64,000 bases of DNA from Macrostomum lignano (taxonomy: Eukaryota), in assembly GCA_002269645.1 (NCBI GenBank), contig NIVC01000521.1:186001-250000 (forward strand), written 5' to 3'. This document shows positions 1,396-22,700 of this stretch, piece by piece. Positions within the stretch are counted from its first letter, which is position 1; every line of letters begins with the position of its first letter. The notes beneath the pieces were generated by a model that saw nothing but the letters and a program-made list of their open reading frames with translations, was not told the origin of the DNA and did no database searches. A program made the position numbers and the translations under genes.

Positions 1396-1980
1396 ATGGC
1401 ATGTGATGTTGCAACTGCCCCAGGCAATCCAGTGTTCTCTCCATTAACTTTGTTTGAGTGCACTGTGACTAATGCTCAGATGCTTGTTGAATCTATGGCT
1501 GACAGGTGAGTAGTGTCTTTATTTGTTCAATCTGTGGAAGTGTATTGGCATTATTGACATGCTGGGTTTTTTCATCAGAATTGTGGTAGAATTTGGCATT
1601 CTAAAGCAGCAATGCCTAAAATCTTGATACAGAATTGAAACTTGGACCGATTAGGATTACAATATTAATAACAAGATTCTGCAATAGGAATCATGGTTAA
1701 GCTTTTTGTTTAACAATACAGCCGCCAATGGAACTTATTGCATCCAAGATGTTACAGATACAAGACTTAGTATTTTAGTAATAGTAATCTAGATGAAGCG
1801 CGCCATGTTTGACCTTATAAAGAACTAGGAAAAACTAACGCTAAATTAACATTACAGGTAGACAGCCACATGAACAGTAGATAAGCAATGACAAAAACAG
1901 CACAATAACCATCTAAGCTACTTTGCTAGCTAGTCTTGTAATACACTAAGACTACAAACTGACGAACACTAAGGCTGGTG

Positions 1981-2036
<56 letters not shown>

Positions 2037-2057
2037 GGACAGGACAGGACAGGACAG

Positions 2058-2097
<40 letters not shown>

Positions 2098-5000: not shown

Positions 5001-6909
5001 GCGGCTCTTGTGATTTTTTAACGACGCAAACAACTGTGATGCGGCGGTAAGGCGACTCTGGGTCACGAGCGCATCACTTGACTTGCAGAATCATAAAAGA
5101 CTAGAGTCGATAAAAAAGAGTCGTCCGAGAGTCGATTTAGCGTTTAATTGTGTGCTACCTGCAACGACTCTGGGGCAATGCAATTAACTCTGGGACGCTT
5201 CTAAGGTTTAATTTAGGATTTTAGGGTTAAAATTAATAGTCAGACCCGATTGATAAATCAACAAAGGAATAGGATTTTAGTGTAAGGGGTGTAGTACTAG
5301 CCTTGCAATGAAAGTTTACTGGGGACTCCAACCCTAGTCTCATCGTTAATTAAGTTATTAAAATTGATTAGAGCTCAAATTAGTGTACAGAAGTGTACTT
5401 TTTCAACGCGTTAAATTGCAATTTTTTCGCAGGCCAACTGTGCCCAGTTGAACTCAACCGGTTAGCCCGATCAGAGAAGCTCTGGCGTCAGCGACTCCTA
5501 ATGCGCCGATTGCGGTCCAAGGATAGCGTAGGTTGCCCTTTTTTCAAGTCTCAGCAAGGAGAGAGAAACAGGGATTTCTATAGTTATTTTATTATCAGTG
5601 CTCGATACTTCTTATTTTTTTATGTTACTTGTTACAGAATGGCTTGGTCGGCAGTATTCTATGGACAAGTATAACAGTACCGCAAAATTTCGGATGCGCA
5701 GGCACAGATACATGTGCAGGGTACGGGGGAATTTGAGTAGAGGGAGAGTTGATGGGATGTCTCCATGGTTTATAGATGCGATGATTGGGTGTCTTGCAAG
5801 TCAAGCACTTCTGAAGCTCCAATGACGGTACCTAACAGTCCTGAAGCTCCAATGACAGGGTACCTAACAGTCCTGAAGCTCCAATGACAGGGTACCTAAC
5901 AGTCCTGAAGCTCTAATGACAGGGTACCTAACAGTCCTGAAGCTCCAATGACAGGGTACCTAACAGTCCTGAAGCTCCAATGACAGGGTACCTAACAGTC
6001 CTGAAGCTCCAATGACAGGGTACCTAACAGTCCTGAAGCTCCAATGACAGGGTACCTAACAGTCCTGAAGCTCTAATGACAGGGTACCTAACAGTCCTGA
6101 AGCTCTAATGACAGGGTACCTAACAGTCCTGAAGCTCCAATGACAGGGTACCTAACAGTCCTGAAGCTCTAATGACAGGGTACCTAACAGTCCTGAAGCT
6201 CCAATGACAGGGTACCCGACAGTCCTGAAGCTCTAATGACAGGGTACCCGACAGTCCTGAAGCTCTATTGACAGGGTACCTAACAGTCCTGAAGCATCAA
6301 TGACAGGGTACCTAACAGTCCTGAAGCTCTAATGACAGGGTACCTAACAGTCCTGAAGCTCCAATGACAGGGTGCCCGACAGTCCTGAAGCTCCAATGAT
6401 ACAGGATGCCTGGCGACCTGGCTACCGACTGTCAATTGTTCCTCATTGCTGACCCTACCTGTATCTCGCATGCCCAGGTCTGCAGCCAACTCCTACCCAC
6501 CCAACCCTCGCAGAAGCTGACCCGCAGGCAGAAAAGCTTCGAACTCATCGCCGGCCGTCTGAGCACCGAAGATTTCGACAAATTCCGCGTCATTTTATCC
6601 CGGGATTACACATCGTCAGATGAGGAATTTGAAGATTGTTCCGCATCGGCAGCTGCCACTGCATCGGCTGGGGCGCCGCTTCGCGTCCGCGAGTTGCCCT
6701 GGGAGTCGGCAGAGATGGCGGAGATGAAGCGGCAGCTGGACACGGCTTACCTGGATAGCTGCGCCACAGCTAAACAGTCCGAACAGTTGCGCCGGGTTGC
6801 CCGCGGCACCGGCTGCCTGAGCGTCCGGCCGCCGCCAGCCGACTGTCCAGATTGGGCGATTCGACGCGAAACCGCTGATCCGGGCGACTTAGGCAACGCC
6901 GATTGTTAA
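1396..6909 (+). CDS. Gene A1, unnamed family (C14orf93/DUF4616-like C-terminal region, putative nuclear or DNA-binding protein), about 470 aa. Exons 1396-1505, 2254-2973, 4307-4404, [5433-5527 or 5638-5720], 6514-6909
   Basis: GT-AG boundaries join in frame. Peptides align with paralog A2: FSPLTLFE..TNAQML.ESMA.REL, GPHLFDFS.PF, KL.RRQ.SFEL...LST...KFRVIL.RDYTSSDEE, LRVRELPWES, RPPP...PDWA. Exon 3 is 98 nt in both paralogs. The family resemblance is recalled, not searched. Confidence 0.8.
1980..2110. repeat. (GACA)n/(GACAG)n microsatellite in A1 intron 1
   Basis: Direct reading. Confidence 0.95.
2985..3990. repeat. GC-rich minisatellite of about 40 nt in A1 intron 2
   Basis: ccaaacccagcgcccctgggaatcggcgccgcccctccctcct units. 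Confidence 0.95.
4477..4494 (+). promoter_or_regulatory. Putative A1 docking site (tctctgtctctctccttg), pairing with selector 5555-5574 (caaggagagagaaacaggga)
   Basis: 12 contiguous Watson-Crick pairs plus an extension after a 2-nt bulge; 73 nt after the A1 exon-3 donor, the same position as the A2 dock. Confidence 0.5.
4931..5130. repeat. Short interspersed repeat; second copy at 19879-20010
   Basis: cccgttgaaaa(a)cgttaccgtgacaagaatcgcta...gtca(c/t)tgcaaac shared by both loci. Confidence 0.7.
5433..5527 (+). CDS. A1 candidate alternative exon a (SQLCPVELNRLARSEKLWRQRLLMRRLRSKDS)
   Basis: ttttttcgcag|GC...AGC|gtaggt, 95 nt, phase 1 to 0, basic C-terminal half. Confidence 0.6.
5638..5720 (+). 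CDS. A1 candidate alternative exon b (KWLGRQYSMDKYNSTAKFRMRRHRYMCR)
   Basis: Long pyrimidine tract + ttacag|AA...AGG|gtacgg, 83 nt, phase 1 to 0. Confidence 0.55.
5810..6395. repeat. 32-nt minisatellite
   Basis: cctgaagctccaatgacagggtacctaacagt. Confidence 0.95.
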
Positions 6910-7744: not shown

Positions 7745-8260
7745 TCGGAGATAGGGATTTCGGAGTGACAGTCTCTCTGGAGTGAGATTTCGGAGTTACA
7801 GTCTCTCTTGAGTGAGATGTCGGAGTGACAGTCTCTCTGGAGCGAGATGTCCGAGTAACAGTCTCTCTGGAGCGAGATGTCGGAGTGACAGTCTCTCTGG
7901 AGCGAGATGTCCGAGTAACAGTCTCTCTGGAGCGAGATGTCGGAGTGACAGTCTCTCTGGAGTGAGATGTCGGAGTGACAGTCTCTCAGGAGTTAGATGT
8001 CGGAGTGACAGTCTCTCTGGAGTGAGATGTCGGAGTGACAGTCTCTCTGGAGTGAGATGTCGGAGTGACAGTCTCTCTGGAGTGAGATGTCGGAGTGACA
8101 GTCTCTCTGGAGCGAGATGTCGGAGTAACAGTCTCTCTGGAGTGAGATGTCGGAGTGACAGTCTCTCTGGAGTGAGATGTCGGAGTGACAGTCTCTCTGG
8201 AGCGAGATGTCGGAGTAACAGTCTCTCTGGAGCGAGATATCGGAGTGACAGTCTCCAGAG
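7745..8260. repeat. 30-nt minisatellite
   Basis: cggagtgacagtctctctggagtgagatgt. Confidence 0.95.
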
Positions 8261-8899
8261 TAAAATTTCAGATTGAGTATGGAGTGACATTAATTTACAA
8301 GGGGAATGATATTTAAGTAACTGCAATTCTGTTTAATAGAATTATTTTAATTACAGCATCCGATACGGAGCCCGCATTTATTTTGGTGTCACATCTGTTC
8401 AAATCGTACCCTGTTGACCCCTGTATAATAATGTACTTTATTAATAATAAAGTACCCATAGTACTCCTGTTATTAACTGTTAGTTGTGCAGGCAGCTAGC
8501 AGTTATTGAAAACTCATATGACCTTACCGTATCGCTTTCCGTTTTTTTAAAGTATTGTGTTTTTTATCTCTGTGCAATGTACTGCGTTTTACATCGCGTC
8601 TAGCTTTGCCTGCAGTATTTGCACTCAGTACTACTATTGGCCTGCTGTTGCGTTTGCTTTTGAATTATCGACAAAAAATATAAAATAAATTGGTTTCCGT
8701 TATGTGGATTTCACTTATGTAATGTCGTTCCTCATTTTTCTTTATTTCGTCCGATAGCAAAATCTTTATATTTTACTACTGTAAACACTACTAAATAGTA
8801 GATACTATGATAGGCCAATGCTTTTTTGTATTTATTCTTTCTTTTGCTTAGCAACTCTTTTAAATCAAGTTTTTTTACGATCATTAGTCACTCTCGGGG

Positions 8900-9120: not shown

Positions 9121-9321
9121 GCGAAATAAAAATATAGGGATTACAGAGGATAATTAGCTAGGTACATTAAACTTCTTACCTCAAGAATTCGTGTTTAATT
9201 CAGAAATCGGATTAAATTTATACAGCAAGATTCAAGCGTTGCCTACTGTCAGTAGAGTAATGGGGTCAGTCTTGTATTATTTATATTGCAATAATGTCTG
9301 ATTTATCATTTCATGCCACAG

Positions 9322-12300
9322 ATGGCAGCCTGCGAGTCGGCTGCGCCGCCATTCTCGCCTCTGACTCTATTCGAGTCGACAATTACCAACGCCCAGATGC
9401 TACTGGAGTCCATGGCCGAACGAGAACTGTTCACCGCTATGCGCATTGTCGCCTGTCTGCATTCCCAGATGCTGCAAGTGATGGAGCCACGGTTTGGCCG
9501 ACTGTGCGATCGAAGCGATCAGCTGGGCCTGCTGATTGACTCTGACCCATCCGCTGCTGGCCGGAGCTCTGGGCAGCAGCAGCAACAGCAGCAACCGGGT
9601 CAGACCTCTAATCAGCAGCAACAGCAGCTGCAGGGCAGTCAGCAGCATCGAACCAAGGCTGATCCAGATGCCGGCGACGGAGTTCTTGGCGCTGCCCTGT
9701 GCGCCATCAAGGTAACTTGATTAATCAGTAGAATTACCACGGGAAATGAAATAAAAAACTGAAGCTTTTTATCGCGACTAGGCAGACATTAGAAACTGCA
9801 CACTCAGTCATGCTTTAAAGCCATTAGGCGGACATTAGAAACTGCACACTCAGTCATGCTTTAGAGCCATTAGGCGGACATTAGAAACTGCACACTCAGT
9901 CATGCTTTAGAGCCATTAGGCGGACATTAGAAACTGCACACTCAGTCATGCTTTAGAGCCATTAGGCGGACATTAGAAACTGCACACTCAGTCATGCTTT
10001 AGAGCCATTAGGCGGACATTAGAAACTGCACACTCAGTCATGCTTTAAAGCCATTAGGCGGACATTAGAAACTGCACACTCAGTCATGCTTTAGAGCCAT
10101 TAGGCGGACATTAGAAACTGCACACAGTCATGCTTTAGAGCCATTAGGCGGACATTAGAAACTGCACACTCAGTCATGCTTTAAAGCCATTAGGCGGACA
10201 TTAGAAACTGCACACAGTCATGCTTTAGAGCCATTAGGCGGACATTAGAAACTGCACACTCAGTCATGCTTTAGAGCCATTAGGCGGACATTAGAAACTG
10301 CACACTCAGTCATGCTTTAGAGCCATTAGGCAGATATTAGAAACTGCACACTCAGTCATGCTTTAAAGCCATTAGGCGGACATTAGAAACTGCACACAGT
10401 CATGCTTTAGAGCCATTAGGCGGACATTAGAAACTGCACACTCAGTCATGCTTTAGAGCCATTAGGCGGACATTAGAAACTGCACACTCAGTCATGCTTT
10501 AGAGCCATTAGGCAGACATTAGAAACTGCACACTCAGTCATGCTTTAAAGCCATTAGGCGGACATTAGAAACTGCACACTCAGTCATGCTTTAAAGCCAT
10601 TAGGCGGACATTAGAAACTGCACACTCAGTCATGCTTTAGAGCCATTAGGCGGACATTAGAAACTGCACACTCAGTCATGCTTTAAAGCCATTAGGCGGA
10701 CATTAGAAACTGCACACTCAGTCATGCTTTAAAGCCATTAGGCGGACATTAGAAACTGCACACTTAGTCATGCTTTAGAGCCATTAGGCGGACATTAGAA
10801 ACTGCACACTCAGTCATGCTTTAAAGCCATTAGGCGGACATTAGAAACTGCACACTCAGTCATGCTTTAGAGCCATTAGGCAGATATTAGAAACTGCACA
10901 CTCAGTCATGCTTTAAAGCCATTAGGCGGATATTAGAAACTGCGCACTCAGTCATGCTTTAAAGCCATTAGGCGGCTGTATGAAAAATCTCCCCCTTTCC
11001 AGGCGGACCCGGATGATTCAACCCGCCGATCCCTGCGCCCCCTGGCCGACTCCACCGCCGCAGTCGCCGCTGGCGCCACCCCCGAGGACGCCGACGATGA
11101 AGAGGAACTGGAAGAAGAACTCGAAGAGGAAGACGAAGAGTGCGTCATCATGGCTGCCACAGCTGCCGAGGAGGCCGAGTTTGCAGCGTCGACTGCCTAC
11201 GGCGGCTATCATCATTCCCAGCATCCCCAGCTTCATCATCCGCAGCAGCAGCAGCCCGTTCCCAAGATTGCCCGCTACGATTTCTCATTAGGCGCCTCCT
11301 CGTCGGCCTCCTCCCTAGCCGCCATTGGTGGCGACGTGCCAGCCGAGTGTAAAACTGTGATGCGCCGGGCCTACAAAGCTTTGAAAGGCGCCGGGCCGCA
11401 TCTGTTCGATTTTAGTCAGCCGTGAGTGTCCGTCCGGTTTGAAATTTAATGCCATAATACCCAACTGTCTTCAGGGTTTTTGTATTTCTTCGAAACCGCA
11501 AGTCTCGTGTGTTTCCTGAAAACAACTAGTCTCGTGTTTTCTTGGAAACTGCTAGTCTCGTGTTTCCTGGAAACCGCAAGTCTCGTGTGTTTCCTGGAAA
11601 CCGCAAATCTCCTGGGTTTCCTGGAAACCGCCAGTCTCCTGTGTTTCCTGGAAACCGCCAGTCTACTATGTTTCCTGGAAACCGCTAGTCTCCTGTTTCC
11701 TGGAAACCGCTAGTCTCCTGTTTCCTGGAAACCGCTAGTCTACTGTGTTTCCTGGAAACCGCTAGTCTCGTGTTTTTCTCAGTCTTATATTTTCTTGGAA
11801 ACCTTTAGTCTCATGTGGTTCTTGGAAACCCCTGGTGTCATGTTTCTCAGAAACGGCTTGTCTCATGTTTATTGGAACTGTCTCATGTTTATTGGAACTG
11901 TCTCATGTTTATTGGAACTGGCTCGTTTGTTTCCTGGAAACCGCTAGTCATGTGTTTCCTGGAAACCAGTAGTCTCGTGCGTTTTCCAGTTTCATATTTT
12001 TTGAAAACCTCTATAAGTTTAAAATTCTTCAATGAACCATTAAAAATGTAGAAACTCCCGTGTATACTCCTTAATTAATATATTCATGCACATTTTCGAA
12101 CCCTTGCCGCCGCAGTTTCGGAGCCGATGTCAATCAGCGAGTTGCCGCCCAGGTGATGACCAAAGCCAAGGAGTTGGCCATAGGCAAGGGCTGGCCAGAT
12201 GACATCTGGCAAAGTGAGTGTCGCTAATATTTGTTATTCAATTTGCTTACTACTATTAGTAGCATATCCATTGTGTTTTAACAATTGTCCTGGAAACGTC

Positions 12301-12628
12301 GCAAGTTCTCACCTTTTTATAGTCACTTGTGTCTCATTCTTTCACCAATTGTCCCACTTGGTCATATCTGCACTTTTCATGCCTACCTGTAACGCTCTTG
12401 TGCGTTGTTGTTCGTTAAAAGGTTTTCAAATTATTCGTTCTCTCAAAACAACGCGATATGCTGTCAATTTTGCAGCGCATTTGTCATTTACAGTGGCATT
12501 GACTTGTATGATCATTAATTATCTAATTAACTGATAACTATAGGAATCTCTGCTATGGCTAACTTTCATATAAATTTGAATTGATAAGCCCGTTTTTATT
12601 AGACCTTCAACATGGGTGTAGATAGATG

Positions 12629-12660
<32 letters not shown>

Positions 12661-12727
12661 TATAGATAGTTAGATAGATAGATAGTTAGATAGATAGATA
12701 GATATATAGACAAATAGAAAGATAGAC

Positions 12728-12796
<69 letters not shown>

Positions 12797-12831
12797 GATA
12801 GATAGAAAGATAGATAAATAGAAAGATAGAC

Positions 12832-12924
<93 letters not shown>

Positions 12925-12959
12925 GATAGATAGAAAGATAGATAAATAGAAAGATAGAC

Positions 12960-13026
<67 letters not shown>

Positions 13027-13042
13027 CAGATAGATAGATAGA

Positions 13043-13091
<49 letters not shown>

Positions 13092-16000
13092 CAGATAGAT
13101 AGATAGAATAGATAGATAGATTCATAGAAAGCTAGATAGACAGACAGACAGATACATGGTCATGGTATTGTCACAGATAATTGCCGTATAAATGCAGTAA
13201 ACTCAACGTCGCACACCAGAGCGAGCCACGAGCGAATCCAGTGTACTTAGCTGGCCCAGTGCAAATGCTTTAAAAGTTAAATGCCGGCCTCTTCCAACTG
13301 CCCTTGCAATTGTCCCTTTCTCTTTGCTATCTCCAACTGTTAAAACAGGCTTGCCAAAGAGGAGCAGACTAGACATGATCTTCCTCACCTTTAAGCACAA
13401 TAATAAGCAGCGAAGTAAATTGTTCGTAAGTCCGCTCGATCTGCTTTTGTCTGTTGCGCGGGTAAAACTGCTTTTTTTGACCAGCAACAATTTTTTGCTC
13501 CAGAATCTTGATTTGCAATAGGCAATTTTGGTTTTGATCTTGTTTTCTTGTCGGCCTCGTGGGGCGACGATGTAAGTTTTTAATTGGTAGCTAATTGCTC
13601 AGGTAGTTTTATTTCGTAGGTAATTGCTCAGGTAGTTTTAATTGGTAGATAATTGCTCAAGTAGTTTTAATTGGTAGCTAATTGCTCAGGTAGTTTTAAT
13701 TGGTAGCTAATTGCTCAGGTAGTTTTATTTGGTAGATAATTGCTCCAGTAGTTTTAATTGGTAGCTAATGGCTCAGGTAGTTTTAATTGGTAGATAATTG
13801 CTCAGGTAGTTTTAATTGGTAGCTAATTGCTCCGGTAGATTTATTTGGTAGATAATTGCTCCAGTAGTTTTAATTGGTAGCTAATTGCTCAGGTAGTTTT
13901 AATTGGTAGCTAATTGCTCAGGTAGTTTTATTTGGTAGATAATTGCTCCCGTAGTTTTAATTGGTAGCTAATTGCTCAGGTAGTTTTAATTGGTAGATAA
14001 TTGCTCAGGTAGTTTTATTGTCCTTGTTTTAATTCGAGTCTAAGTTAGTTACTTATCTATAGAAGCTTGTGACGTTTCTTTAATTAATTTATAATTAATT
14101 AGATAGTTAGTAAGACCAATAAGGCAAAACGGAAGGTAAACTCGCCGTTAAACTTGCAGGCCTACCGCCTGTGTGCCGTTTGTCGACTGTATTCTCTAAA
14201 TTGCGATTCGATATTCGACGGAATTATAAATTTAACGTAAGATTAATTAGGATTCAAAGCAGGGAAGATTTTCGTAATTTCCAGTCTTGAATAAACATTG
14301 TTTTAATTCTTTATTATTTTATATTTTAATTGTTTCTCCAAGCATTAATTGCTTACAACTTGTGACGTTTCAAATCAGTTCCTGTCGAAAAAGTTCCGCA
14401 TTTTAAAATGATTAACAATAATTTTTTCTATGCAATGTTTTTTCTAGGAATTGCCTACAAATATCGTATAGATGGCATTTTTAGTCATTTTCGGACCAAG
14501 GCCAAGTCTAAATATCGGGAAATCGTAAGCCAAAATAATGCGCCTCTGCTACTACTCACAACTACAACTACAACTACGTGTGTTGCGTGTACTTTTGTGT
14601 TACATTGTAAACGGCGTTTATTTGATGCTCGCCGTGTCTAAATCATAGGGTTGAGATTAAGGCATGTTTAAAATCATAACGGTGAGATTAAGCCATATTT
14701 GAAATCATAGAGGTGAGATTAAGCTGTGGCCAAGTATTGGGATGAGATTAAGCCATGTTTGAAATCATAGGGTGAGATTAAGCTGTGGCCAAGTATTGGG
14801 ATGAGATTAAGCCATGTTTGAAATCATAGGGTGAGATTAAGCTGTGGCCAAGTATTGGGATGAGATTAAGCCATATTTGAAATCATAGGGTTGATATTAA
14901 GCTGTGGCCAAGTATTGGGATGAGATTAAGCCATGTTTGATATCATAGGGGTGAGATTAAGCTGTGGCCAAGTATTGGGATGTGATTAAGCCATGTTTGA
15001 AATCATAGGGGTGAGATTAAGCTGTGGCCAAGTATTGGGATGAGATTAAGCCATATTTGAAATCATAGGGGTGAGATTAAGCTGTGGCCAAGTATTGGGA
15101 TGTGATTAAGCCATGTTTGATATTATAGGGTGAGATTAGGGCATGTTTAAAATCATAAGGGGTGAGATTAAGTCATATTTGAAATCATAGGGGTGAGATT
15201 AAGCTGTGGCCAAGTATTGGAATGAGATTAAGCCATGTTTGAAATCATAGGGGTGAGATTAAGCTGTGGCCAAGTATTGGGATGTGATTAAGCCATGTTT
15301 GAAATCATAGGGTGAGATTAAGCTGTGGCCAAGTATTGGGATGTGATTAAGCCATGTTTGAAATCATAGGGTTGATATTAAGCTGTGGCCAAGTATTGGG
15401 ATGTGATTAAGCCATGTTTGAAATCATAGGGTTGATATTAAGCTGTGGCCAAGTATTGGGATGTGATTAAGCCATGTTTGAAATCATAGGGTTGATATTA
15501 AGCTGTGGCCAAGTATTGGAATGAGATTAAGCCATGTTTGAAATCATAGGGTTGATATTAAGCTGTGGCCAAGTATTGGAATGAGATTAAGCCATGTTTG
15601 AAATCATAGGGGTGATATTAAGCTGTGGCCAAGTATTGGGATGTGATTAAGCCATGTTTGAAATCATAGGGGTGAGATTAAGCTGTGACCAAGTATTGGG
15701 ATGTGATTAAGCCATATTTGAAATCATAGGGTGAGATTAAGCTGTGACCAAGTATTGGGATGTGATTAAGCCATATTTGAAATCATAGGGTGAGATTAAG
15801 CTGTGACCAAGTATTGGGATGTGATTAAGCCATATTTGAAATCATAGGGGTGAGATTAAGCTGTGGCCAAGTATTGGGATGTGATTAAGCCATATTTGAA
15901 ATCATAGGGGTGAGATTAAGCTCTGACCAATTATTGGGATGTGATTAAGCCATGTTTAAAATCATAGGGTGAGATTAAGCTGTGTTCAATCACACGGATA

Positions 16001-18319
16001 GGATCAGGCCTTGTCTTAATCCTTAGGGTTAGATTAAGCTGTGCCCAAATAGAGTGAGATTAAGCCATGCTTGAATAATTGGGATGAGATTAAGCTTTAT
16101 TATTTTTTTTCTGAAAAGTCTCCGACCGTGAAGGTGGGATTGCTGGACGAGCTGGCTGGCAGATCCAACTGCAATTTGCGACGTTTTCAAGAGCCAGTCC
16201 GAAATCCAAGAATTCCCTAATTAATCTCCTATTCAACGTATTTTCAGAGATGCCCTACACATCAAAAATAGTTTACTTATTTTCAAATTTTCGCGCTAAA
16301 ATGCGCATCAAACTGAGGAACTCTGTAAGCTAATGATGTCATGCAAGTTGTTTTTTTATTTCTAGAAAAATCTCCAATCTCCTACTGACAGTAGAGTCAT
16401 AAAGACACGGAGAACTCGCGCTCGTTTTTTGAGACAGTGAAATATGTACTATTATGTAATTAATAGTAATATATGTACTGTTGCTTTGCAATCAATTTAT
16501 ACAAAATCTCGTAGGACTTCCTTGCGACAGTCGGATAAAATATTTGCACGCAAATTTTGGCGTGAAAATTCGCGCTAGACACAAGCAGAAAGTGAGTATA
16601 CTTATTAGAGCGATATGGACAGTTCAATGGTCCGAGCGAGACTGAGTGTGAGCGGGAGGGAGACTGAGTGTGAGCGGGAGGGAGACTGAGTGTGAGCGGG
16701 AGGGAGACTGAGTGTGAGCGGGAGGGAGACTGAGTGTGAGCGGGAGGGAGACTGAGTGTGAGCGGGAGGGAGACTGAGTGTGAGCGGGAGGGAGACTGAG
16801 TGTGAGCGGGAGGGAGACTGAGGGCGAGAGGGAGACTGAGGGCGAGAGGGAGACTTGAGGACGAAAGGAAGAGGGGTATTGAAATGCATATTAAAGGTGA
16901 GGATAATAATAGTCAAGAGGAAGACAGAGAAATGAGGGAGAGATGGTAAGTGAAATGGGTTTTATTAATAAAGAGTCCCACAAGACAAACCGTTGAGTCG
17001 GTCAGAAGCGGCCGTACAGTCTTATCCAAGCTGATGGTGGTCCTAACCTGCTCATTGCCAAACTAACCGAAGAATCGCTATTCGCTTCCTCACAACTGCC
17101 ACAGAAGCTCAGCCGTCGCCAGCGCAGCTTCGAACTGGTTGCCACCAGCCTCAGCACTGACGAATTGGAGAAATTCCGGGTTATTCTCACCCGGGATTAC
17201 ACCAGCTCGGATGAGGAGTGCGGCTCCGGCGGCTCCGACCAGCTGCGGGTGCGCGAGCTGCCTTGGGAGTCTGATGAGGTAAACTATGCGCTATTTAGGT
17301 CTTTGTGTCTGCTCTGTAGGTCTTTGTGTCTGCTCTGTAGGTCTTTGTGCCTGCTCTGTAGGTCTCTGAGCCTGCTCTGTAGGTCCTTGTGCCTGCTCTA
17401 TAGGTCTTTGTGCCTGCTCTGTAGGGTCTTTGTGCCTGCTCTGTAGGTCTTTGTGCCTGCTCTGTAGGTCTGAGCCTGCTATGTTGGTCTTTGTGCCTGC
17501 TCTGTAGGTCTTTGAGCCTGCTCTGTAGGTCCTTGTGCCTGCTCTATAGGTCTTTGTGCCTGCTCTGTAGGGTCTTTGTGCCTGCTCTGTAGGTCTTTGT
17601 GCCTGCTCTGTAGGTCTGAGCCTGCTATGTTGGTCTTTGTGCCTGCTCTGTAGGTCTTTGAGCCTACTCTGTAGGTCTTTGTGGCTGCTCTGTAGGTCTT
17701 TGAGCCTGCTCTATAGGTCTTTGTGGCTGCTCTGTAGGGTCTTTGTGCCTGCTCTATAGGTCTTTGTGGCTGCTCTGTAGGTCTTTTTGTCTGCTATGTA
17801 GGTCTTTGTGCCTGCTCTGTAGGTCTTTGAGCCTGCTATGTAGGTCTTTGTGCCTGCTCTGTAGGTCTTTGAGCCTGCTATGTAGGTCTTTTTGCCTGCT
17901 CTGTAGGTCCTTCTCTGTGTCTGCTATTAGGTCTTTGTCTGTGTCTGCTCTAGAGGTCTTTGTGCGTCTGCTCTGTAGGTCCCTGTCTGTTGGTCTATTC
18001 TCTAGCTTTTCCCTCCGTTCGTCAGTATCTGTATGTTAGTCAGTGTTTTTCTATTGATATTTACATGTCCATATTTTGTCTGACCACATCCTAATCATAA
18101 TCCTAATCCCGGCAGGTAAAGCGGCTGAAGCGCCAGCTGGACCAGGTGTACGCCGACAACTGCGCCACTACCAAGCAGCGCCAGCAGCTGGCCAAGAGTA
18201 TCAGAGACCCGATGCGGGCCAGGTCGCAGCGCCCGCCGCCTGAGGGCGCGCCAGACTGGGCATTGAAACCCGCGCCGTCCTCGCCAACTGGCGCCTCGGC
18301 ATCGGGAGCGCGTCGTTAA
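9322..18319 (+). CDS. Gene A2, tandem paralog of A1, 453 aa. Exons 9322-9711, 11003-11421, 12116-12213, one of five 77-nt alternative exons, 17105-17278, 18116-18319
   Basis: In-frame GT-AG splicing and strong peptide similarity to A1 at both termini. The linker is acidic and Gln/His-rich with KxDP-type motifs. TAA stop at 18317-18319. Confidence 0.85.
9780..10975. repeat. 46-nt minisatellite filling the first coding intron of A2, about 26 copies
   Basis: ggcggacattagaaactgcacactcagtcatgctttagagccatta. Confidence 0.95.
11485..11990. repeat. Minisatellite of about 27 nt in A2 intron 2, carrying TTCCTGGAA GAS motifs
   Basis: tttcctggaaaccgctagtctc units; about 15 TTC-N3-GAA sites. Confidence 0.9.
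12288..12310 (+). promoter_or_regulatory. Putative splicing docking site for the A2 exon cassette (tcctggaaacgtcgcaagttctc)
   Basis: Its reverse complement matches sequences upstream of E2-E5; the core begins about 80 nt after the exon-3 donor. Confidence 0.75.
12618..13155. repeat. (GATA)n microsatellite between the dock and E1
   Basis: Direct reading. Confidence 0.97.
13349..13425 (+). CDS. A2 alternative exon E1 (SLPKRSRLDMIFLTFKHNNKQRSKLF)
   Basis: 77 nt, acag|GC...TTC|gtaagt, phase 1 to 0, open in frame with exons 12116-12213 and 17105. Confidence 0.85.
13575..14020. repeat. 29-nt minisatellite between E1 and E2
   Basis: ggtagttttaattggtagctaattgctca. Confidence 0.95.
14065..14078 (+). 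promoter_or_regulatory. Putative selector for E2 (gcttgtgacgtttc)
   Basis: 14 bp with dock 12293-12306 including two G-U pairs; ends about 80 nt before E2. Confidence 0.75.
14160..14236 (+). CDS. A2 alternative exon E2 (SLPPVCRLSTVFSKLRFDIRRNYKFN)
   Basis: 77 nt, ttgcag|GC...AAC|gtaaga, phase 1 to 0, homologous to E1. Confidence 0.85.
14357..14371 (+). promoter_or_regulatory. Putative selector for E3 (aacttgtgacgtttc)
   Basis: 15 bp with dock 12293-12307 including one G-U pair; ends about 75 nt before E3. Confidence 0.78.
14448..14524 (+). CDS. A2 alternative exon E3 (RIAYKYRIDGIFSHFRTKAKSKYREI)
   Basis: 77 nt, tttctag|GA...ATC|gtaagc, phase 1 to 0. Confidence 0.85.
14640..16095. repeat. 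60-nt minisatellite (two 30-nt halves) between E3 and E4
   Basis: gaaatcataggggtgagattaagctgtggccaagtattgggatgtgattaagccatgttt. Confidence 0.95.
16173..16189 (+). promoter_or_regulatory. Putative selector for E4 (aatttgcgacgttttca)
   Basis: 17 bp with dock 12291-12307 including two G-U pairs; ends about 60 nt before E4. Confidence 0.78.
16248..16324 (+). CDS. A2 alternative exon E4 (KMPYTSKIVYLFSNFRAKMRIKLRNS)
   Basis: 77 nt, ttttcag|AG...TCT|gtaagc, phase 1 to 0. Confidence 0.85.
16410..16430 (+). promoter_or_regulatory. Putative weaker selector for E5 (gagaactcgcgctcgtttttt)
   Basis: Imperfect complement of the dock (gagaact 7 bp, gcg, cgttt plus G-U pairs); ends about 85 nt before E5. 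Confidence 0.55.
16515..16591 (+). CDS. A2 alternative exon E5 (RLPCDSRIKYLHANFGVKIRARHKQK)
   Basis: 77 nt, ctcgtag|GA...AAA|gtgagt, phase 1 to 0. Confidence 0.85.
16635..16855. repeat. 22-nt minisatellite after E5
   Basis: gagactgagtgtgagcgggagg. Confidence 0.95.
17295..17990. repeat. 21-nt minisatellite in the last A2 intron
   Basis: gtaggtctttgtgcctgctct. Confidence 0.95.
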
Positions 18320-18349
18320 AGCAAAAATAAACTCTGGTGTCATGTCACA

Positions 18350-18870
18350 TGTGTCCCCCAGCCATCATAATAAACACACAGGTGTCCCCCAGCCATCATA
18401 ATAAACACACAGGTGTCCCCAGCCATCATAATAATCACACAGGTGTCCCCAGCCATGATAACAAACACACAGGTGTCCCCAGCCTTCATAATAAACATAC
18501 AGGTGTCCCCAGCCATCATAATAAACACACAGGTGTCCCCAGCCATGATAACAAACACACAGGTGTCCCCAGCCTTCATAATAAACACACAGGTGTCCCC
18601 CAGCCATCATAATAAACACACAGGTGTCCCCCAGCCATCATAATAAACACACAGGTGTCCCCCAGCCATCATAATAAACACACAGGTGTCCCCCAGCCAT
18701 CATAATAATCACACAGGTGTCCCCAGCCATCATAATAAACACACAGGTGTCCCCAGCCATCATAATAAACACACAGGTGTCCCCCAGCCATCATAACAAA
18801 CACACAGGTGTCACCCAGCCATCATAATAAACACACAGGTGTCACCCAGCCATCATAATAAACACACAGG
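18350..18870. repeat. 33-34-nt minisatellite downstream of A2
   Basis: ccccagccatcataataaacacacaggtgtc. Confidence 0.95.
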
Positions 18871-19749
18871 TATTAAGTAAGTATTAAAAAGTAAGTAAAA
18901 GTCATCTATTTGAAACCAATATTCTCTTTGTATTTGTCTTATTCTGCATCAAATTTCATGTCATCATCAGTTAGCTTTTTTTAATTCAGTCCGGCAGGTG
19001 TTTCTGCAGTTCATTGTTCTTTTTTTCTTTTTATAATTTTTCGCTATGCTTTAGTAAAAATTTCATGTTCATTATTAGCTACTGTTTAGGTTGAGTCGAT
19101 ATGTTTTAATTCATGCATGTGCGATCCGGTGCCAAACATCGCGCGCACACGCTCTACATATACTACTTAATACAGACACTTACTAGTAGCAGCTACTAAT
19201 TCCATCTGGACGTTGTACAGCCTGTGTGCATCTATCATATTTATATATTTGCTTGCTATTCATCTTTTTTGTCAGCTGCGTTCACTGTTATAATGCTTAT
19301 TAATATTAATATTGATAATTATCTGTATAATTATATTCAGCTTGTGTGTCCATGTGCAATTATATCTAACTTTCCTTTTTCTTACTATTACTATTGTTAA
19401 CTACTATAATATTAAATATCTGCTGCACAACTATGTCCAGCCTGTGTTGTTCTGATCCAATAAAACCATCTGATCTGTTTGCATAAATACACAATTGGTT
19501 GGCTACTCCGATACCGCAACTTCAATTGCCATCCATCCAATGTACTTTTAAGTTGAAAACGAAAATTTTTCCTGCATTTTTTATTTAAAAGAAAAAGAAA
19601 AGGCACTACTTATTTGTTATGTGTATAAGTAGTATGATGCTAGTTTTAGAAACGAGCCAGGTCTTTAAAGACTATGCAGTCTATATCCGTTGCAATTCAT
19701 GCGTATCCGGCATCGCTAGACATTGGGAGCGGTGTTGCGGCAATGCGCA

Positions 19750-22700
19750 ATGTCTGCGGAGAATCGATTGAGTCAAGTGCTGCAGCTGTGCGAGCATGAC
19801 CGCAATATTCTAGAAGTGAGGATCCAGATGAATCTACTACTATTATAGACATTTTCATCATACTCGTATTCAACCTATCCCGTTGAAAACGTTACCGTGA
19901 CAAGAATCGCTAAATAGTCATTGCAAACAGCTCACTAGTGACTCTGGTGTGAATCCTGTGACTAAGAGTCGTAAAAGAGTTATCCAAGAGTCGTTGGGTT
20001 TGCGCCTAACTGTCTACTGATTCAAGTAGTCTAAATAGAGTTGTTAAAAATGAGAACTGCGATTCTAATTCATAAAGTGACGATTCATAAAGGATGGGCG
20101 TTCCATGGTGGAAGTCATCGCAATTACCAAGAGTCATGTGTCTACGAGTATATTTCGTTATGTAGGTTCCGTTCTACTTTCGGTTGTGTCTATATTGCGT
20201 TATGTAGGTTCAGTTCCACTTCCGGTTGTGTCTATATTGCGTTATGTAGGTTCAGTTCCACTTCCGTTTGTGTCTATATTGCGTTATGTAGGTTCAGTTC
20301 CACTTCCGGTTGTGTCTATATTGCGTTATGTAGGTTCAGATCCACTTCCGGTTGTGTCTATATTGCGTTATGTAGGTTCAGTTCCACTTCCGGTTGTGTC
20401 TATATTGCGTTATGTAGGTTCAGTTCCACTTCCGGTTGTGTCTATATTGCTATCAATAGGTTTGGTGACACCTCTGGTTGCGTCTATACTGCTCTCAATA
20501 GGTTTGGTGGCACTTCCGGTTGTATCTATATTGCGTCATGTAGGTTCAGTTCTACTTCCGGTTGTGTCTACGAGTATATTACGTTATGTAGGTTCAGTTT
20601 CACTTCCGGTTTTGTCTATATTGCATCATGTATAGTAGGTTCAGTTCAACTTCCGGTTGTGTCTATATTGCATCATTTAGGTTCAGTTCCACTTCCGGTT
20701 GTATCTATATTGCGCCATGTAGGTTCAGTTCTACCTCCGGATATATATCTACCATATCTTTGGTATGTATATATATATACGAGTATATATGGTTGTGTCT
20801 ATTGTGTCTATTGCTCCCAGTATATATAGTAGACACAATACAATATATTCTAGAGAGAGATCCATCTAGAATATAAGCATCATTTAGGTTCAGTTCAACT
20901 ACCGGTTATGTCTATATTGCGCCATGTAGATGCAGTTCCACTTCCGGTTTTTCAACTTTTATTTCTAATATAACCTGTAATTGCTATTTACATAGTAGCT
21001 CCCTACCATAAGTAAAATGGTTCAGGATAAGCCTTAATTTCCTAACTTTACTTAGTGAAAGCGTCCAAATGTTTTGCAATCGAGTGGCGATCTTCCAACT
21101 CCCCTGCCAGGAGCTGCGCTCGCTGTACAACTCTCTATGGAACGGCTTCCTGACGCTGAAATTCCGTCGCATCGTGGATCCCGTTGTACTGCGCCACCTT
21201 CGCTACCTGACCGAGGTGGACTGCGCCAATGCGCAAAACGACTGCATCCAGCGTGCCTATGAGTTTCTCAACGAGGTCTGCCAGGCTGTCAGCGACAGCT
21301 ATGACTCGGATATTCGTAGCGCCGGGGCCAGCGAGATGGCTATGACGCTTGAGGATGAGAAAATGGCCGAGCTGTCCGTGCTGAAGGCTAAGTAAGCTAA
21401 AGTTGCGGATGTACTTTCGGTTTCACTTCCGGTTGTGTCGATATTGATCCCAGTAGGTTTGATTCTACTTCCGGTTGTGTCGATATTGATCCTAGTAGGT
21501 TTGGTTCCACTTCTTTTTGTGTCGATATTGATCCTAGTAGGTTTGGTTCCACTTCCGGTTGTGTCTATATTGATCCCAGTAGGTTTGATTCTACTTCCGG
21601 TTGTGTCGATATTGATCCTAGTAGGTTTGGTTCCACTTCTTTTTGTGTCGATATTGATCCTAGTAGGTTTGGTTCCACTTCCGGTTGTGTCGATATTGAT
21701 CCTAGTAGGTTTGGTTCTACTTCCGGTTGTGTCGATATTGATCCTAGTAGGTTTGGTTCCACTTCTTTTTGTGTCGATATTGATCCTAGTAGGTTTGGCT
21801 CAACTTCCGGTTGTGTCTATATTGATCCCAGTAGGTTGGGTTCCACTTCCGGTTGTGTCTATATTGATCCCAGTAGGTTGGGTTCCACTTCCGGTTGTGT
21901 GTGTCTATTTGTCTCCAAGGGGTTTATTTCCGATTGTGTCTAAATTACCATAATCTCACTTTCGATTAGCTTGAATCCGTTAATGCTGAATCTGATCCTA
22001 CTGATCGATCCCCATGAATCGCAAATGCCAGATTCGAGAAAGAGCCGCACGAGCTGGTCCGGCTGATGCAGGCCTGCCTGATGGAGGAGAGCCGCCTGCT
22101 GGCCAGGACTGCCGCTGCTGAGTCACAGGGGCCGGCCAGCGGTGTGAGTGGCCGGCTGCCGCTTGGTTGCATGTCTCTCTCTGTCACTCTGTCAGTCTGT
22201 CTGTCTGTCTGTTTGTCTGTCTCACATGCCAGTGCATCCCTCCAATCGGCAGGCTGCCCCGAAGCGGCCATCCTCCTCAGACTCCGCACTGCTGGACGCG
22301 GCTCTCGACACCAACCGGAAGCTTCGCCGCCTAGCCGTGGACCAGCAGCAGCAGCCGGCCCCGGACCCGGCCAGCCTGGAGGCGGAGCTGCGCAGCCAGC
22401 ACGAGGCTCTGGTTGGTCAGCTGAACAGCCGGGAGTCGCTGATCAACAGCCCCAGCAGCGGCCGGGACTCCGACAGGCTGGGCCGCGAGCTGTCCTGCGT
22501 GCTGGACTCGCTGCTCCGGCTGTACGAGGCCAACCCGCTGCCGCGCCTCGCAGCCATGGCCGGCGACCTGCTAACAAGGAGTCTGCTGATCCTGACTCAG
22601 GACGACCAGGTCATCAAGCAGAGGAAGTCCAATTATTGTCTGAGTCTGCGCTATTTGGCTGGCGACTTTCTCCAGCCCGACCGTCTGTACGAGTTTAAGG

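What the first reader, a model, noticed from the sequence alone, without database searches (positions are those of the whole stretch)
12214..17104. Dscam-like array of five mutually exclusive 77-nt exons in an unnamed gene (A2)
Seen in sequence: between constitutive exon 12116-12213 (ends phase 1) and exon 17105 (starts phase 0) lie five exons at 13349, 14160, 14448, 16248 and 16515. Each is exactly 77 nt, flanked by AG and a strong GTAAG/GTGAG donor, stop-free in the same frame, and homologous without gaps: SLPKRSRLDMIFLTFKHNNKQRSKLF / SLPPVCRLSTVFSKLRFDIRRNYKFN / RIAYKYRIDGIFSHFRTKAKSKYREI / KMPYTSKIVYLFSNFRAKMRIKLRNS / RLPCDSRIKYLHANFGVKIRARHKQK. Including zero or two would shift the frame, so exactly one is expected per mRNA. 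Established knowledge: this architecture is known from arthropod Dscam1, Mhc and 14-3-3. Inference: I know of no such cassette in this family. The exons sit among minisatellites and do not appear as a unit in the ORF track.
Basis: partly seen in the sequence, partly recalled or inferred. Interest (0 to 1): 0.95.

Follow-up and report, generated by a model that had tools for sequence, protein, structure and literature searches.

The report
Flatworm Dscam-style mutually exclusive exon array
A flatworm (Macrostomum lignano) gene of unknown function carries five interchangeable 77-base exons, and a conserved intronic "docking" sequence pairs with a "selector" in front of four of them, the same RNA-pairing layout that insects use to choose one Dscam1 exon per mRNA.

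Summary
The window is Macrostomum lignano contig NIVC01000521.1. The gene is GenBank BOX15_Mlig022797g2, a hypothetical protein.

All five 77-nt exons sit at the stated coordinates. Each has an AG acceptor and a GTAAG or GTGAG donor and is open only in the required frame. A profile built only from cassettes of other loci finds exactly these five in the window.

The RNA-seq-derived GenBank models contain exactly one cassette (cassette 3). A third gene copy has a transcript that skips all cassettes and is frameshifted.

New here:
- Two paralogous genes carry collinear arrays of 14 and 7 cassettes.
- A 17-nt intronic element, CTGGAAACGTCGCAAGT (window 12290-12306), is invariant in all three genes. 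It supplies the only intronic 11-mers that all three share.
- Its reverse complement lies 58-80 nt upstream of cassettes 2, 3 and 4 (15-17 bp helices), and in an interrupted form upstream of cassette 5.
- This is the Dscam1 exon-6 docking/selector layout.

Not shown: use of cassettes 1, 2, 4 and 5 in mRNA, and pairing in vivo. Cassette 1 has no intact selector. The protein family has no Pfam, PDB or fold match.

Verdict: a new member of a known kind, in a new phylum and a new gene family.

The parts
9313..9711 (+). Exon 1 of the gene (ATG at 9313). The GenBank CDS is marked partial and begins one codon later.
   Evidence: Spliced model reproduces PAA81625.1 exactly; donor GT.
11003..11421 (+). 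Exon 2. Encodes an acidic, low-complexity linker and the GPHLFDF motif.
   Evidence: AG/GT flanks and an exact match to PAA81625.1.
12116..12213 (+). Constitutive exon 3, upstream of the array. It ends one base into a codon; donor GTGAGT.
12290..12306 (+). Docking site CTGGAAACGTCGCAAGT, 76 nt downstream of the exon 3 donor.
   Evidence: Identical 17-mer in paralogs B (L003 12391-12407; its second copy L006 holds the 16-nt core GGAAACGTCGCAAGTT at 4549-4564) and C (L004 11887-11903). It supplies the only intronic 11-mers shared by all three genes. Third-codon-position identity between the paralogs is only 56-76%.
13229..13242 (+). Degenerate selector remnant upstream of cassette 1 (GCGAATCCAG, against GCGTTTCCAG in its paralog-B counterparts). 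It no longer forms a helix with the docking site.
   Evidence: Best duplex -15.7 kcal/mol, equal to the shuffle mean; only 5 contiguous bp. The comparison with the B.1-B.3 selectors is by eye.
13349..13425 (+). Variable exon 1 (SLPKRSRLDMIFLTFKHNNKQRSKLF). Weak polypyrimidine tract.
   Evidence: Best counterpart is paralog B cassette B.1, 13/26 identical.
14064..14079 (+). Selector for variable exon 2 (AGCTTGTGACGTTTCT), 80 nt upstream of the exon.
   Evidence: 16 contiguous bp (3 G-U) with docking 12292-12307. Duplex -24.5 kcal/mol; 1 of 200 shuffles as good.
14160..14236 (+). Variable exon 2 (SLPPVCRLSTVFSKLRFDIRRNYKFN).
   Evidence: Counterpart B.4, 12/26.
14357..14371 (+). Selector for variable exon 3 (AACTTGTGACGTTTC), 76 nt upstream of the exon.
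   Evidence: 15 contiguous bp (1 G-U). Duplex -23.1 kcal/mol; 0 of 200 shuffles as good.
14448..14524 (+). Variable exon 3 (RIAYKYRIDGIFSHFRTKAKSKYREI). This is the cassette in the GenBank models.
   Evidence: PAA81625.1 (this contig) and PAA65011.1 (second copy) contain it alone.
16173..16189 (+). Selector for variable exon 4 (AATTTGCGACGTTTTCA), 58 nt upstream of the exon.
   Evidence: 17 contiguous bp (2 G-U). Duplex -25.1 kcal/mol; 1 of 200 shuffles as good. It ranks second among 31,984 windows scanned across the 64 kb.
16248..16324 (+). Variable exon 4 (KMPYTSKIVYLFSNFRAKMRIKLRNS).
   Evidence: Counterparts are C.1 (14/26) and B.6, whose own best window match is exon 4.
16409..16441 (+). 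Interrupted selector for variable exon 5 (GGAGAACTCGCGCTCGTTTTTT...), about 73 nt upstream of the exon.
   Evidence: Duplex -21.7 kcal/mol against a shuffle mean of -13.0; 3 of 200 shuffles as good. The longest uninterrupted stem is 7 bp.
16515..16591 (+). Variable exon 5 (RLPCDSRIKYLHANFGVKIRARHKQK).
   Evidence: Counterpart B.7, 16/26.
17105..17278 (+). Constitutive exon downstream of the array (KLSRRQRSFEL...ESDE); it starts on a codon boundary.
18116..18319 (+). Last coding exon, including the stop codon.

Best explanation
What it is. The interval holds a cluster of five tandemly duplicated 77-nt exons in the Macrostomum lignano gene BOX15_Mlig022797g2. One exon is spliced between exon 3 (12116-12213) and the exon starting at 17105. 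Each cassette encodes an alternative 26-residue basic helical segment in the folded C-terminal domain of a protein of unknown function.

Proposed mechanism (inferred from sequence, not tested). A single docking site in the pre-mRNA (12290-12306), just downstream of exon 3, can pair with only one selector at a time. Selectors lie 58-80 nt upstream of cassettes 2, 3 and 4, and in an interrupted form upstream of cassette 5. The helix that forms loops out the cassettes in between and brings or activates the cassette just downstream of the chosen selector for splicing to exon 3.

Backstop. Because 77 = 3n+2, an mRNA with zero or two cassettes is frameshifted and meets a premature stop. Such an mRNA would give a truncated product and would probably be degraded.

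Origin. The array arose by tandem duplication of an ancestral constitutive 77-nt exon together with its upstream intron. This happened before the gene itself triplicated into paralogs with 5, 14 and 7 cassettes.

Shown: the exon anatomy, homology, conservation, complementarity, and single-cassette and skipped transcripts. Inferred: pairing in vivo, its causal role, and use of cassettes 1, 2, 4 and 5.
For: Exon anatomy and frame.

Independent profile: an HMM from cassettes of other loci finds exactly these five.

Transcripts. The GenBank annotation of this assembly is built only from RNA-seq and transcriptome assemblies, and TACO's isoform-frac 0.75 setting discards minor isoforms (PMC5730564).
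- PAA81625.1 (this locus) and PAA65011.1 (second copy) contain cassette 3 alone.
- PAA90078.1 (paralog B) contains only B.9, the 10th of 14 cassettes.
- PAA59491.1 (third copy) joins exon 3 directly to exon 5 and is frameshifted.

Paralogs. Paralog B has 14 cassettes (13 of 77 nt, one of 71 nt). Paralog C has 7 of 77 nt. Best-match relations are collinear: A2.1-5 correspond to B.1, B.4, B.5, B.6 and B.7. Each pair is more alike (11-16 of 26) than any two cassettes within one gene (7-9 of 26).

Ancestral state. Related gene D has one constitutive 77-nt exon of the same type and no docking site. Neighbour A1 has one 95-nt exon at the same position.

Docking site. The 17-nt core is identical in the three paralogs, inside introns that otherwise cannot be aligned. 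It supplies the only intronic 11-mers all three share. Third-codon-position identity between the paralogs is only 56-76%.

Selectors.
- Helices of 15-17 bp for c2-c4; an interrupted duplex of -21.7 kcal/mol for c5.
- Selectors found for 9 of 14 B cassettes, mostly 58-93 nt upstream.
- All 7 C cassettes carry a 9-13 bp match 56-122 nt upstream, though for one (C.1) the duplex energy was not unusual against shuffles (20 of 200).

Whole-locus scans. The strongest docking-complementary windows are selectors: ranks 2-4 of 31,984 windows in the 64-kb window, the top 5 in L003, and the top 4 in L004.

Pattern search. The docking sequence at up to 3 mismatches gives 3 hits against 0.13 expected by chance.

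RNA-level signs.
- Departures from perfect complementarity favour G-U-compatible transitions, 27 against 13.
- One compensatory T-A to A-T exchange lies between the docking flank and the orthologous selectors B.7 and C.2.
Against: - No transcript or junction evidence was obtainable for cassettes 1, 2, 4 or 5 of this gene. Every annotated model of it uses cassette 3 or none.
- Cassette 1 lacks an intact selector. So do five of the B cassettes: B.0 (the 71-nt one), B.4 and B.11-13. Pairing therefore cannot be the whole story.
- The selectors are related by descent, so the counts are not independent events.
- The docking site never varies in its core, so there is almost no true covariation; only one flank pair shows it.
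- Nothing here shows that the RNA pairs in vivo.
- The protein's function, and so the benefit of the diversity, is unknown.
Confidence: 0.75

Rival explanations
1. Only cassette 3 is a working, effectively constitutive exon in this gene. The other four are decaying relics of old tandem duplications that the spliceosome ignores.
For: Both annotated full-length models of this gene use cassette 3. Cassette 1 has a poor polypyrimidine tract and a degenerate selector.
Against: - All five keep an open frame, exact length and consensus splice sites.
- Each has a recognisable counterpart in paralog B, in the same order, across a divergence at which third-codon-position identity is only 56-76% and the introns cannot be aligned.
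- Selectors for c2, c4 and c5 are retained.
- The paralog B transcript uses a different position in its array.
- The annotation pipeline keeps only dominant isoforms.
Confidence: 0.12
2. The repeated ...GCGACGTTTCC... motif and its inverted copy act at the DNA level rather than as RNA pairing partners. They could be binding sites for a factor (TGACGT resembles a CRE half-site), for example per-exon enhancers or promoters as in clustered protocadherins or sDscam.
For: A protein-binding site could also be conserved and could sit at a fixed distance from each exon. The docking core never varies, so there is almost no covariation to prove pairing.
Against: - The cassettes are internal exons with acceptor sites, and transcripts show them spliced to exon 3.
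- There is exactly one copy in the 'docking' orientation per gene, always in the intron after exon 3. All copies in front of cassettes are in the opposite orientation.
- Different selectors complement different but overlapping stretches of the docking site.
- Mismatches favour G-U-compatible changes on the transcribed strand, 27 against 13.
- One compensatory flank change is present.
Confidence: 0.08
3. The cassettes are ordinary independent cassette exons that can be included in any number, giving combinatorial rather than mutually exclusive products.
For: None specific. Some automatic ML2-assembly predictions in UniProt string two or three cassettes together.
Against: - 77 nt is not a multiple of three. 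Nine of the ten double inclusions stop at codon 338, inside the second cassette, and the pair 1+2 stops at codon 415.
- The multi-cassette predictions only keep the frame by truncating a cassette or using other splice sites.
- The RNA-seq-based models with a complete reading frame (PAA81625.1, PAA65011.1, PAA90078.1) have exactly one cassette.
Confidence: 0.03

Closest known systems
Drosophila/insect Dscam1 exon 6 cluster (docking site and selector sequences; Graveley 2005, cited from my own knowledge; follow-up work in PMC3535345, PMC7430681, PMC8791459)
   Same: - A tandem array of homologous exons of equal length lies between two constitutive exons.
- There is a single conserved docking site in the intron right after the upstream constitutive exon.
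- A selector complementary to it lies upstream of most variable exons.
- Selectors overlap on the docking site, so only one helix can form at a time.
- Exon length keeps the frame only if exactly one exon is included.
   Different: - Different phylum (Platyhelminthes) and an unrelated protein with no Ig or FN3 domains.
- Smaller arrays: 5, 14 and 7 exons, against 48.
- A shorter docking core of 17 nt.
- The same docking sequence is shared by three paralogous genes.
- Some cassettes, including cassette 1 here, lack a selector.
- No experimental evidence, and no known repressor (an hrp36 equivalent) or locus control region.
Other arthropod mutually exclusive exon clusters with competing RNA structures (14-3-3zeta, Mhc, MRP, srp; PMC4691838, PMC6071210)
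   Same: Small clusters of 2-7 tandemly duplicated exons with intronic competing pairings. The origin by duplication of an exon together with one arm of an intronic stem, as modelled in PMC6071210, fits the constant selector-to-exon spacing seen here.
   Different: Several of those clusters use downstream or bidirectional docking sites. Here only an upstream docking site was found, and no second conserved element was found in the last intron.
Helminth coq-2 mutually exclusive exon pair (PMC7434440)
   Same: Shows that mutually exclusive splicing of homologous exons occurs in flatworms.
   Different: It is a pair, not an array. I know of no docking/selector system reported for it, and the gene is unrelated.
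Clustered protocadherins and chelicerate sDscam (variable exons chosen by alternative promoters; PMC9258826)
   Same: Tandem arrays of homologous variable exons, each preceded by a conserved sequence element.
   Different: Those variable exons are first exons with their own promoters. Here the cassettes are internal 77-nt exons with acceptor sites, spliced to an upstream exon.

Membership tests
Cluster of mutually exclusive exons from tandem exon duplication (criteria of Kassiopeia/WebScipio, PMC3923563) | Neighbouring exons of similar length | tested here: met
   All five are exactly 77 nt and lie in one interval between two constitutive exons.
Cluster of mutually exclusive exons from tandem exon duplication (criteria of Kassiopeia/WebScipio, PMC3923563) | Sequence homology between the exons | tested here: met
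   An HMM from cassettes of other loci finds all five at E = 1.5e-9 to 5.9e-5 and nothing else in 64 kb. They align without gaps.
Cluster of mutually exclusive exons from tandem exon duplication (criteria of Kassiopeia/WebScipio, PMC3923563) | Same reading frame and conserved splice sites | tested here: met
   Open only in the frame dictated by exon 3; AG acceptors and GTAAG/GTGAG donors.
Cluster of mutually exclusive exons from tandem exon duplication (criteria of Kassiopeia/WebScipio, PMC3923563) | Exactly one exon of the cluster in each mature mRNA, with different exons used in different mRNAs | tested here: inconclusive
   RNA-seq-based models carry exactly one cassette: c3 in two copies of this gene, and B.9 in paralog B. 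One model carries none and is frameshifted. Use of c1, c2, c4 and c5 could not be checked because the tools give no access to reads.
Docking-site/selector competing RNA structure (Dscam1 exon 6 type) | One docking site in the intron next to a flanking constitutive exon, conserved among related genes | tested here: met
   CTGGAAACGTCGCAAGT at 12290-12306 is identical in paralogs B and C and supplies the only shared intronic 11-mers.
Docking-site/selector competing RNA structure (Dscam1 exon 6 type) | A selector complementary to the docking site upstream of each variable exon | tested here: met
   Met for 4 of 5 cassettes here: c2-c4 form 15-17 bp helices and c5 an interrupted duplex. Also met for 9 of 14 in B and 7 of 7 in C, though one C selector (C.1) did not stand out from shuffles in duplex energy. 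Not met for cassette 1.
Docking-site/selector competing RNA structure (Dscam1 exon 6 type) | Selectors compete for the same docking nucleotides | tested here: met
   The window helices (c2-c4) all include docking positions 12293-12307. The helices of paralogs B and C use the equivalent core positions. This is in silico only.
Docking-site/selector competing RNA structure (Dscam1 exon 6 type) | Disrupting the pairing changes exon choice, and compensatory mutations restore it | not testable with these tools
   Needs minigene or transgenic experiments.
Dscam / immunoglobulin-superfamily gene family | Protein with Ig and FN3 domains homologous to Dscam | tested here: not met
   No Pfam domain, no PDB sequence match and no fold match. 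The relatives are uncharacterised proteins. 'Dscam-like' refers to the splicing layout only.

The most novel reading that the evidence does not exclude
A docking-site/selector system for mutually exclusive splicing evolved independently in flatworms. It operates on a three-gene family that shares one invariant docking sequence and 26 variable exons (5 + 14 + 7). It diversifies one helix of a protein domain that is conserved across metazoans but uncharacterised. The helix might act as a specificity code for a partner or a nucleic acid. To my knowledge this would be the first docking/selector array described outside arthropods that is larger than a pair, and it sits in an animal where transgenesis is available to test it.
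Probability: 0.6. Interest if true: 0.85.

Novelty: new member of a known kind. Interest (0 to 1): 0.78.

Why it matters
- Large docking/selector arrays are known almost only from arthropod genes, and how they arise is debated. This looks like an independent origin in another phylum.
- The evolutionary series is still visible in one genome: a single constitutive 77-nt exon (gene D), then arrays of 5, 7 and 14 exons that share one docking site.
- That series gives a natural test of the model in which an exon is duplicated together with one arm of an intronic stem.
- It also gives a small system (a 17-nt docking site, five exons) in a flatworm with established transgenesis, where docking, selector and compensatory mutants could be made.
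- It points to an uncharacterised protein family that is widespread in animals and greatly expanded in Macrostomum. One helix of that protein has evidently been worth diversifying.
- For genome annotation, the current GenBank models show one isoform, or truncated products, for these genes.

Tried and rejected
- Organism. I first took the sequence for an insect. One search places it in M. lignano (GCA_002269645.1).
- Protein identity. All of these came back empty: Pfam on exon translations and on family members, a PDB sequence search with a family profile, and an AlphaFold model followed by Foldseek against PDB (best E = 1.8). The C-terminal domain is confidently modelled as helical but has no known relative.
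- Isoforms. A database search with an alignment of all 25 possible isoform junction peptides, meant to find transcripts using other cassettes, returned only the three hits already known.
It was rerun with an alignment of database proteins.
- More cassettes. None was found elsewhere in the window, and none of this type in neighbour A1.
- Second docking site. I looked for one that could serve the selector-less cassettes B.11-13, and for conserved elements in the last intron. None was found.
- Steric hindrance from short introns was rejected as the cause of exclusivity. The introns between adjacent cassettes are 116-211 nt or longer, measured from the coordinates.
- Literature. Searches for Macrostomum or flatworm mutually exclusive splicing, docking/selector in Platyhelminthes, and the gene identifiers found no prior description.
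Full report
**Where the window comes from**

An ORF in the window is recorded on contig NIVC01000521.1 of assembly GCA_002269645.1. The paper describing that assembly identifies it as Mlig_3_7 of the flatworm Macrostomum lignano (PMC5730564). The window corresponds to about 186001-250000 of that contig.

**Checking the observation**

- Each is exactly 77 nt, preceded by AG and followed by GTAAG or GTGAG.
- Each is open in only one frame, the one imposed by exon 12116-12213, which ends one base into a codon.

Simple AG-N77-GT windows open in that frame are not rare. There are nine in the interval, so that feature alone is weak. Homology is the discriminating feature. A profile built only from 20 cassettes of paralogous genes on other contigs picks out exactly these five among 2,510 six-frame fragments of the 64-kb window. 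Their E-values run from 1.5e-9 to 5.9e-5, and the next hit is at 0.12.

The intervening introns are largely satellites:
- (TAGA)n at 12619-13154
- a 29-mer array at 13578-14017
- a 60-mer array at 14686-16096
- a 22-mer array at 16634-16852

**The gene**

The exons are 9313-9711, 11003-11421, 12116-12213, one cassette, 17105-17278 and 18116-18319. With cassette 3, this model reproduces GenBank protein PAA81625.1 (BOX15_Mlig022797g2, hypothetical protein) residue for residue.

That annotation was built only from RNA-seq and transcriptome assemblies (StringTie, TACO, and a mapped de novo assembly), with ORFs called by TransDecoder. TACO was run with isoform-frac 0.75, which removes minor isoforms. 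The annotated models therefore reflect real assembled transcripts, but only the dominant one at each locus.

**Transcript evidence**

- This locus (PAA81625.1) and a near-identical second copy (L002; PAA65011.1) carry cassette 3 alone.
- A third copy (PAA59491.1) has a transcript that joins exon 3 directly to the exon at 17105.
- By calculation, skipping gives a stop at codon 323. Nine of the ten double inclusions stop at codon 338, inside the second cassette, and the pair 1+2 stops at codon 415.

**Paralogs: the array is old and maintained**

Protein searches found a family that is greatly expanded in M. lignano. I retrieved the loci of two close paralogs.
- Paralog B (L003, and its second copy L006) has 14 cassettes between the equivalent constitutive exons. 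Thirteen are 77 nt and one is 71 nt.
- Paralog C (L004) has seven cassettes of 77 nt.
- All have AG/GT flanks and the same frame.
- The RNA-seq-based model of paralog B (PAA90078.1) contains only cassette B.9, the tenth in the array. It skips nine cassettes upstream and four downstream.

Each window cassette is more similar to a cassette of paralog B (11-16 of 26 residues) than to any other cassette of its own gene (7-9 of 26). These relations are collinear: A2.1-5 correspond to B.1, B.4, B.5, B.6 and B.7. The ancestor therefore already had at least five distinct cassettes. Their identities have been preserved while third-codon-position identity between the paralogs fell to 56-76%.

A more distant relative, gene D (L005), has a single constitutive 77-nt exon of the same type. 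The tandem neighbour A1 in this window has a single 95-nt exon (5433-5527) at that position. Both give a picture of the state before duplication.

**A docking site and selectors**

Reading the introns, I found CTGGAAACGTCGCAAGT at 12290-12306, 76 nt after the exon 3 donor.
- The same 17-mer is present in the corresponding intron of paralog B (L003 12391-12407) and paralog C (L004 11887-11903); B's second copy, L006, holds its 16-nt core at 4549-4564.
- The introns around it cannot be aligned.
- Across about 4-7.5 kb of intron per gene, its 11-mers are the only ones shared by all three genes.

Its reverse complement, allowing G-U pairs, lies upstream of the cassettes:

| Cassette | Selector | Pairing | Distance upstream of exon | Duplex energy (kcal/mol) | Shuffles as good (of 200) |
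|---|---|---|---|---|---|
| 2 | 14064-14079 | 16 bp | 80 nt | -24.5 | 1 |
| 3 | 14357-14371 | 15 bp | 76 nt | -23.1 | 0 |
| 4 | 16173-16189 | 17 bp | 58 nt | -25.1 | 1 |
| 5 | 16409-16441 | interrupted | about 73 nt | -21.7 | 3 |

Further support:
- Paralog B has selectors for nine of its 14 cassettes, mostly 58-93 nt upstream.
- All seven C cassettes carry a 9-13 bp match 56-122 nt upstream. For one of them, C.1, the duplex energy did not stand out from shuffles (20 of 200).
- Scanning every 32-nt window of each locus for pairing with the docking site puts selectors at ranks 2-4 of 31,984 in the 64-kb window, ranks 1-5 in L003 and ranks 1-4 in L004.
- The tool's own pattern search finds 3 matches at up to 3 mismatches against 0.13 expected by chance.
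- The window helices (c2-c4) all include docking positions 12293-12307, and those of B and C use the equivalent core positions, so only one can form at a time.
- Orthologous cassettes share orthologous selector variants, for example GCGACGTTTTCA before A2.4 and B.6.
- Departures from perfect complementarity are enriched for G-U-compatible transitions, 27 against 13 for the other transitions.
- Where the docking flank differs between B (T) and C (A), the orthologous selectors B.7 and C.2 carry A and T respectively. This is one compensatory exchange.

This is the layout described for the Dscam1 exon 6 cluster. It also fits the duplication model of PMC6071210.

**Limits**

- Cassette 1 has no working selector. 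The sequence at 13229-13242 looks like a mutated copy of the B.1-B.3 selector, and its best duplex equals the shuffle mean.
- Five B cassettes also lack a selector, and no second docking element was found.
- Selectors are related by descent, so the enrichment counts are not independent events.
- The invariant docking core leaves almost no room for covariation.
- I could not obtain read-level evidence. A search with all 25 junction peptides found nothing new. Use of cassettes 1, 2, 4 and 5, strict exclusivity per molecule, and pairing in vivo all remain inferences.

**The protein**

- There is no Pfam domain, no PDB sequence match and no structural match.
- An exhaustive profile search finds 301 relatives at E up to 0.001. 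Most of the best are M. lignano paralogs. More distant, unnamed proteins occur in a starfish (Patiria miniata), two acorn worms (Ptychodera flava, Glandiceps talaboti) and a mussel (Potamilus streckersoni).
- An AlphaFold model built from a 26-sequence alignment has a mean pLDDT of 66.7.
- The model has an N-terminal three-helix region (pLDDT about 80), a long disordered acidic linker, and a confidently modelled helical C-terminal domain covering residues 240-445, most of it at pLDDT 86-98.
- The cassette (residues 303-328) forms the end of one helix and the first half of a long helix that continues into the constitutive KLSRRQ segment.
- The cassettes are strongly basic, with a conserved pattern LP...R[IL]..[IL]F..F.
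- My inference, at low confidence, is that the cassette tunes a binding surface for a partner or a nucleic acid.

**Comparison and novelty**

In mechanism and architecture this matches Dscam1 exon 6. In protein family it is unrelated to Dscam. Mutually exclusive exon pairs are known in flatworms (coq-2, PMC7434440), and tandem exon arrays occur in several phyla (PMC6071210). I found no report of a docking/selector array in Platyhelminthes, nor of this gene family.

I class it as a new member of a known kind. It is of clear interest because it appears to be an independent origin, the evolutionary intermediates are present in one genome, and the animal can be made transgenic.

Noticed in passing
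window 4576-4591 and 12515-12530; L004 about 12016-12031: An identical 16-nt AT-rich motif, TTAATTATCTAATTAA, lies in the intron after the exon-3 homolog of both tandem paralogs, A1 and A2, and also in paralog C. None is expected by chance. A1 has no exon array, so the motif is not part of the docking/selector system. It might be an intronic enhancer or a splicing element.
   Followed up: partly
window 13205-13213: A second copy of the docking core 9-mer, AACGTCGCA, lies 135 nt upstream of cassette 1. It is the only other occurrence in the 64 kb. It is present in both copies of this gene and absent from paralogs B and C. Its predicted pairing with the selectors is weak, -13.6 to -17.5 kcal/mol. 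Its role is unknown.
   Followed up: partly
window about 1399-6909: This is the tandem paralog A1. It corresponds to UniProt prediction A0A1I8I2.. (P0008, automatically named 'Rab-GAP TBC domain-containing protein'). It has homologous exons and a single 95-nt exon (5433-5527) where A2 has its array. Its last two coding exons are fused.
   Followed up: partly
other contigs: PAA59491.1, PAA64749.1, PAA80364.1 and relatives: Several GenBank models of this gene family are 'partial' and end just after exon 3. Some read into the intron; one joins exon 3 to exon 5 out of frame. Short-read transcript assembly probably breaks at the variable region, so the current annotation under-represents these genes.
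   Followed up: partly
UniProt M. lignano entries A0A1I8J016, A0A1I8HCJ5, A0A1I8H780, A0A1I8FQ03: Gene predictions from the older ML2 assembly string two or three cassettes together with truncated ends. They also carry misleading automatic names such as Ribosomal_L28e, Exocyst and Protein kinase. These are chimeric or frame-repaired models, not evidence for multi-cassette mRNAs.
   Followed up: partly
window 24466-25020: An ORF on the + strand has an SH2 domain (Pfam E = 1.9e-5) that looks STAT-like by eye. It belongs to a neighbouring multi-exon gene at about 21-25 kb.
   Followed up: no
window 12619-16852 and many other places (for example 7796-8326, 17296-17981, 18346-18871, 20041-21953): The density of minisatellites and microsatellites in the introns is very high. 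Within the array, every selector lies between a satellite and its exon, so selector-to-exon spacing is kept while the rest of the intron expands.
   Followed up: partly
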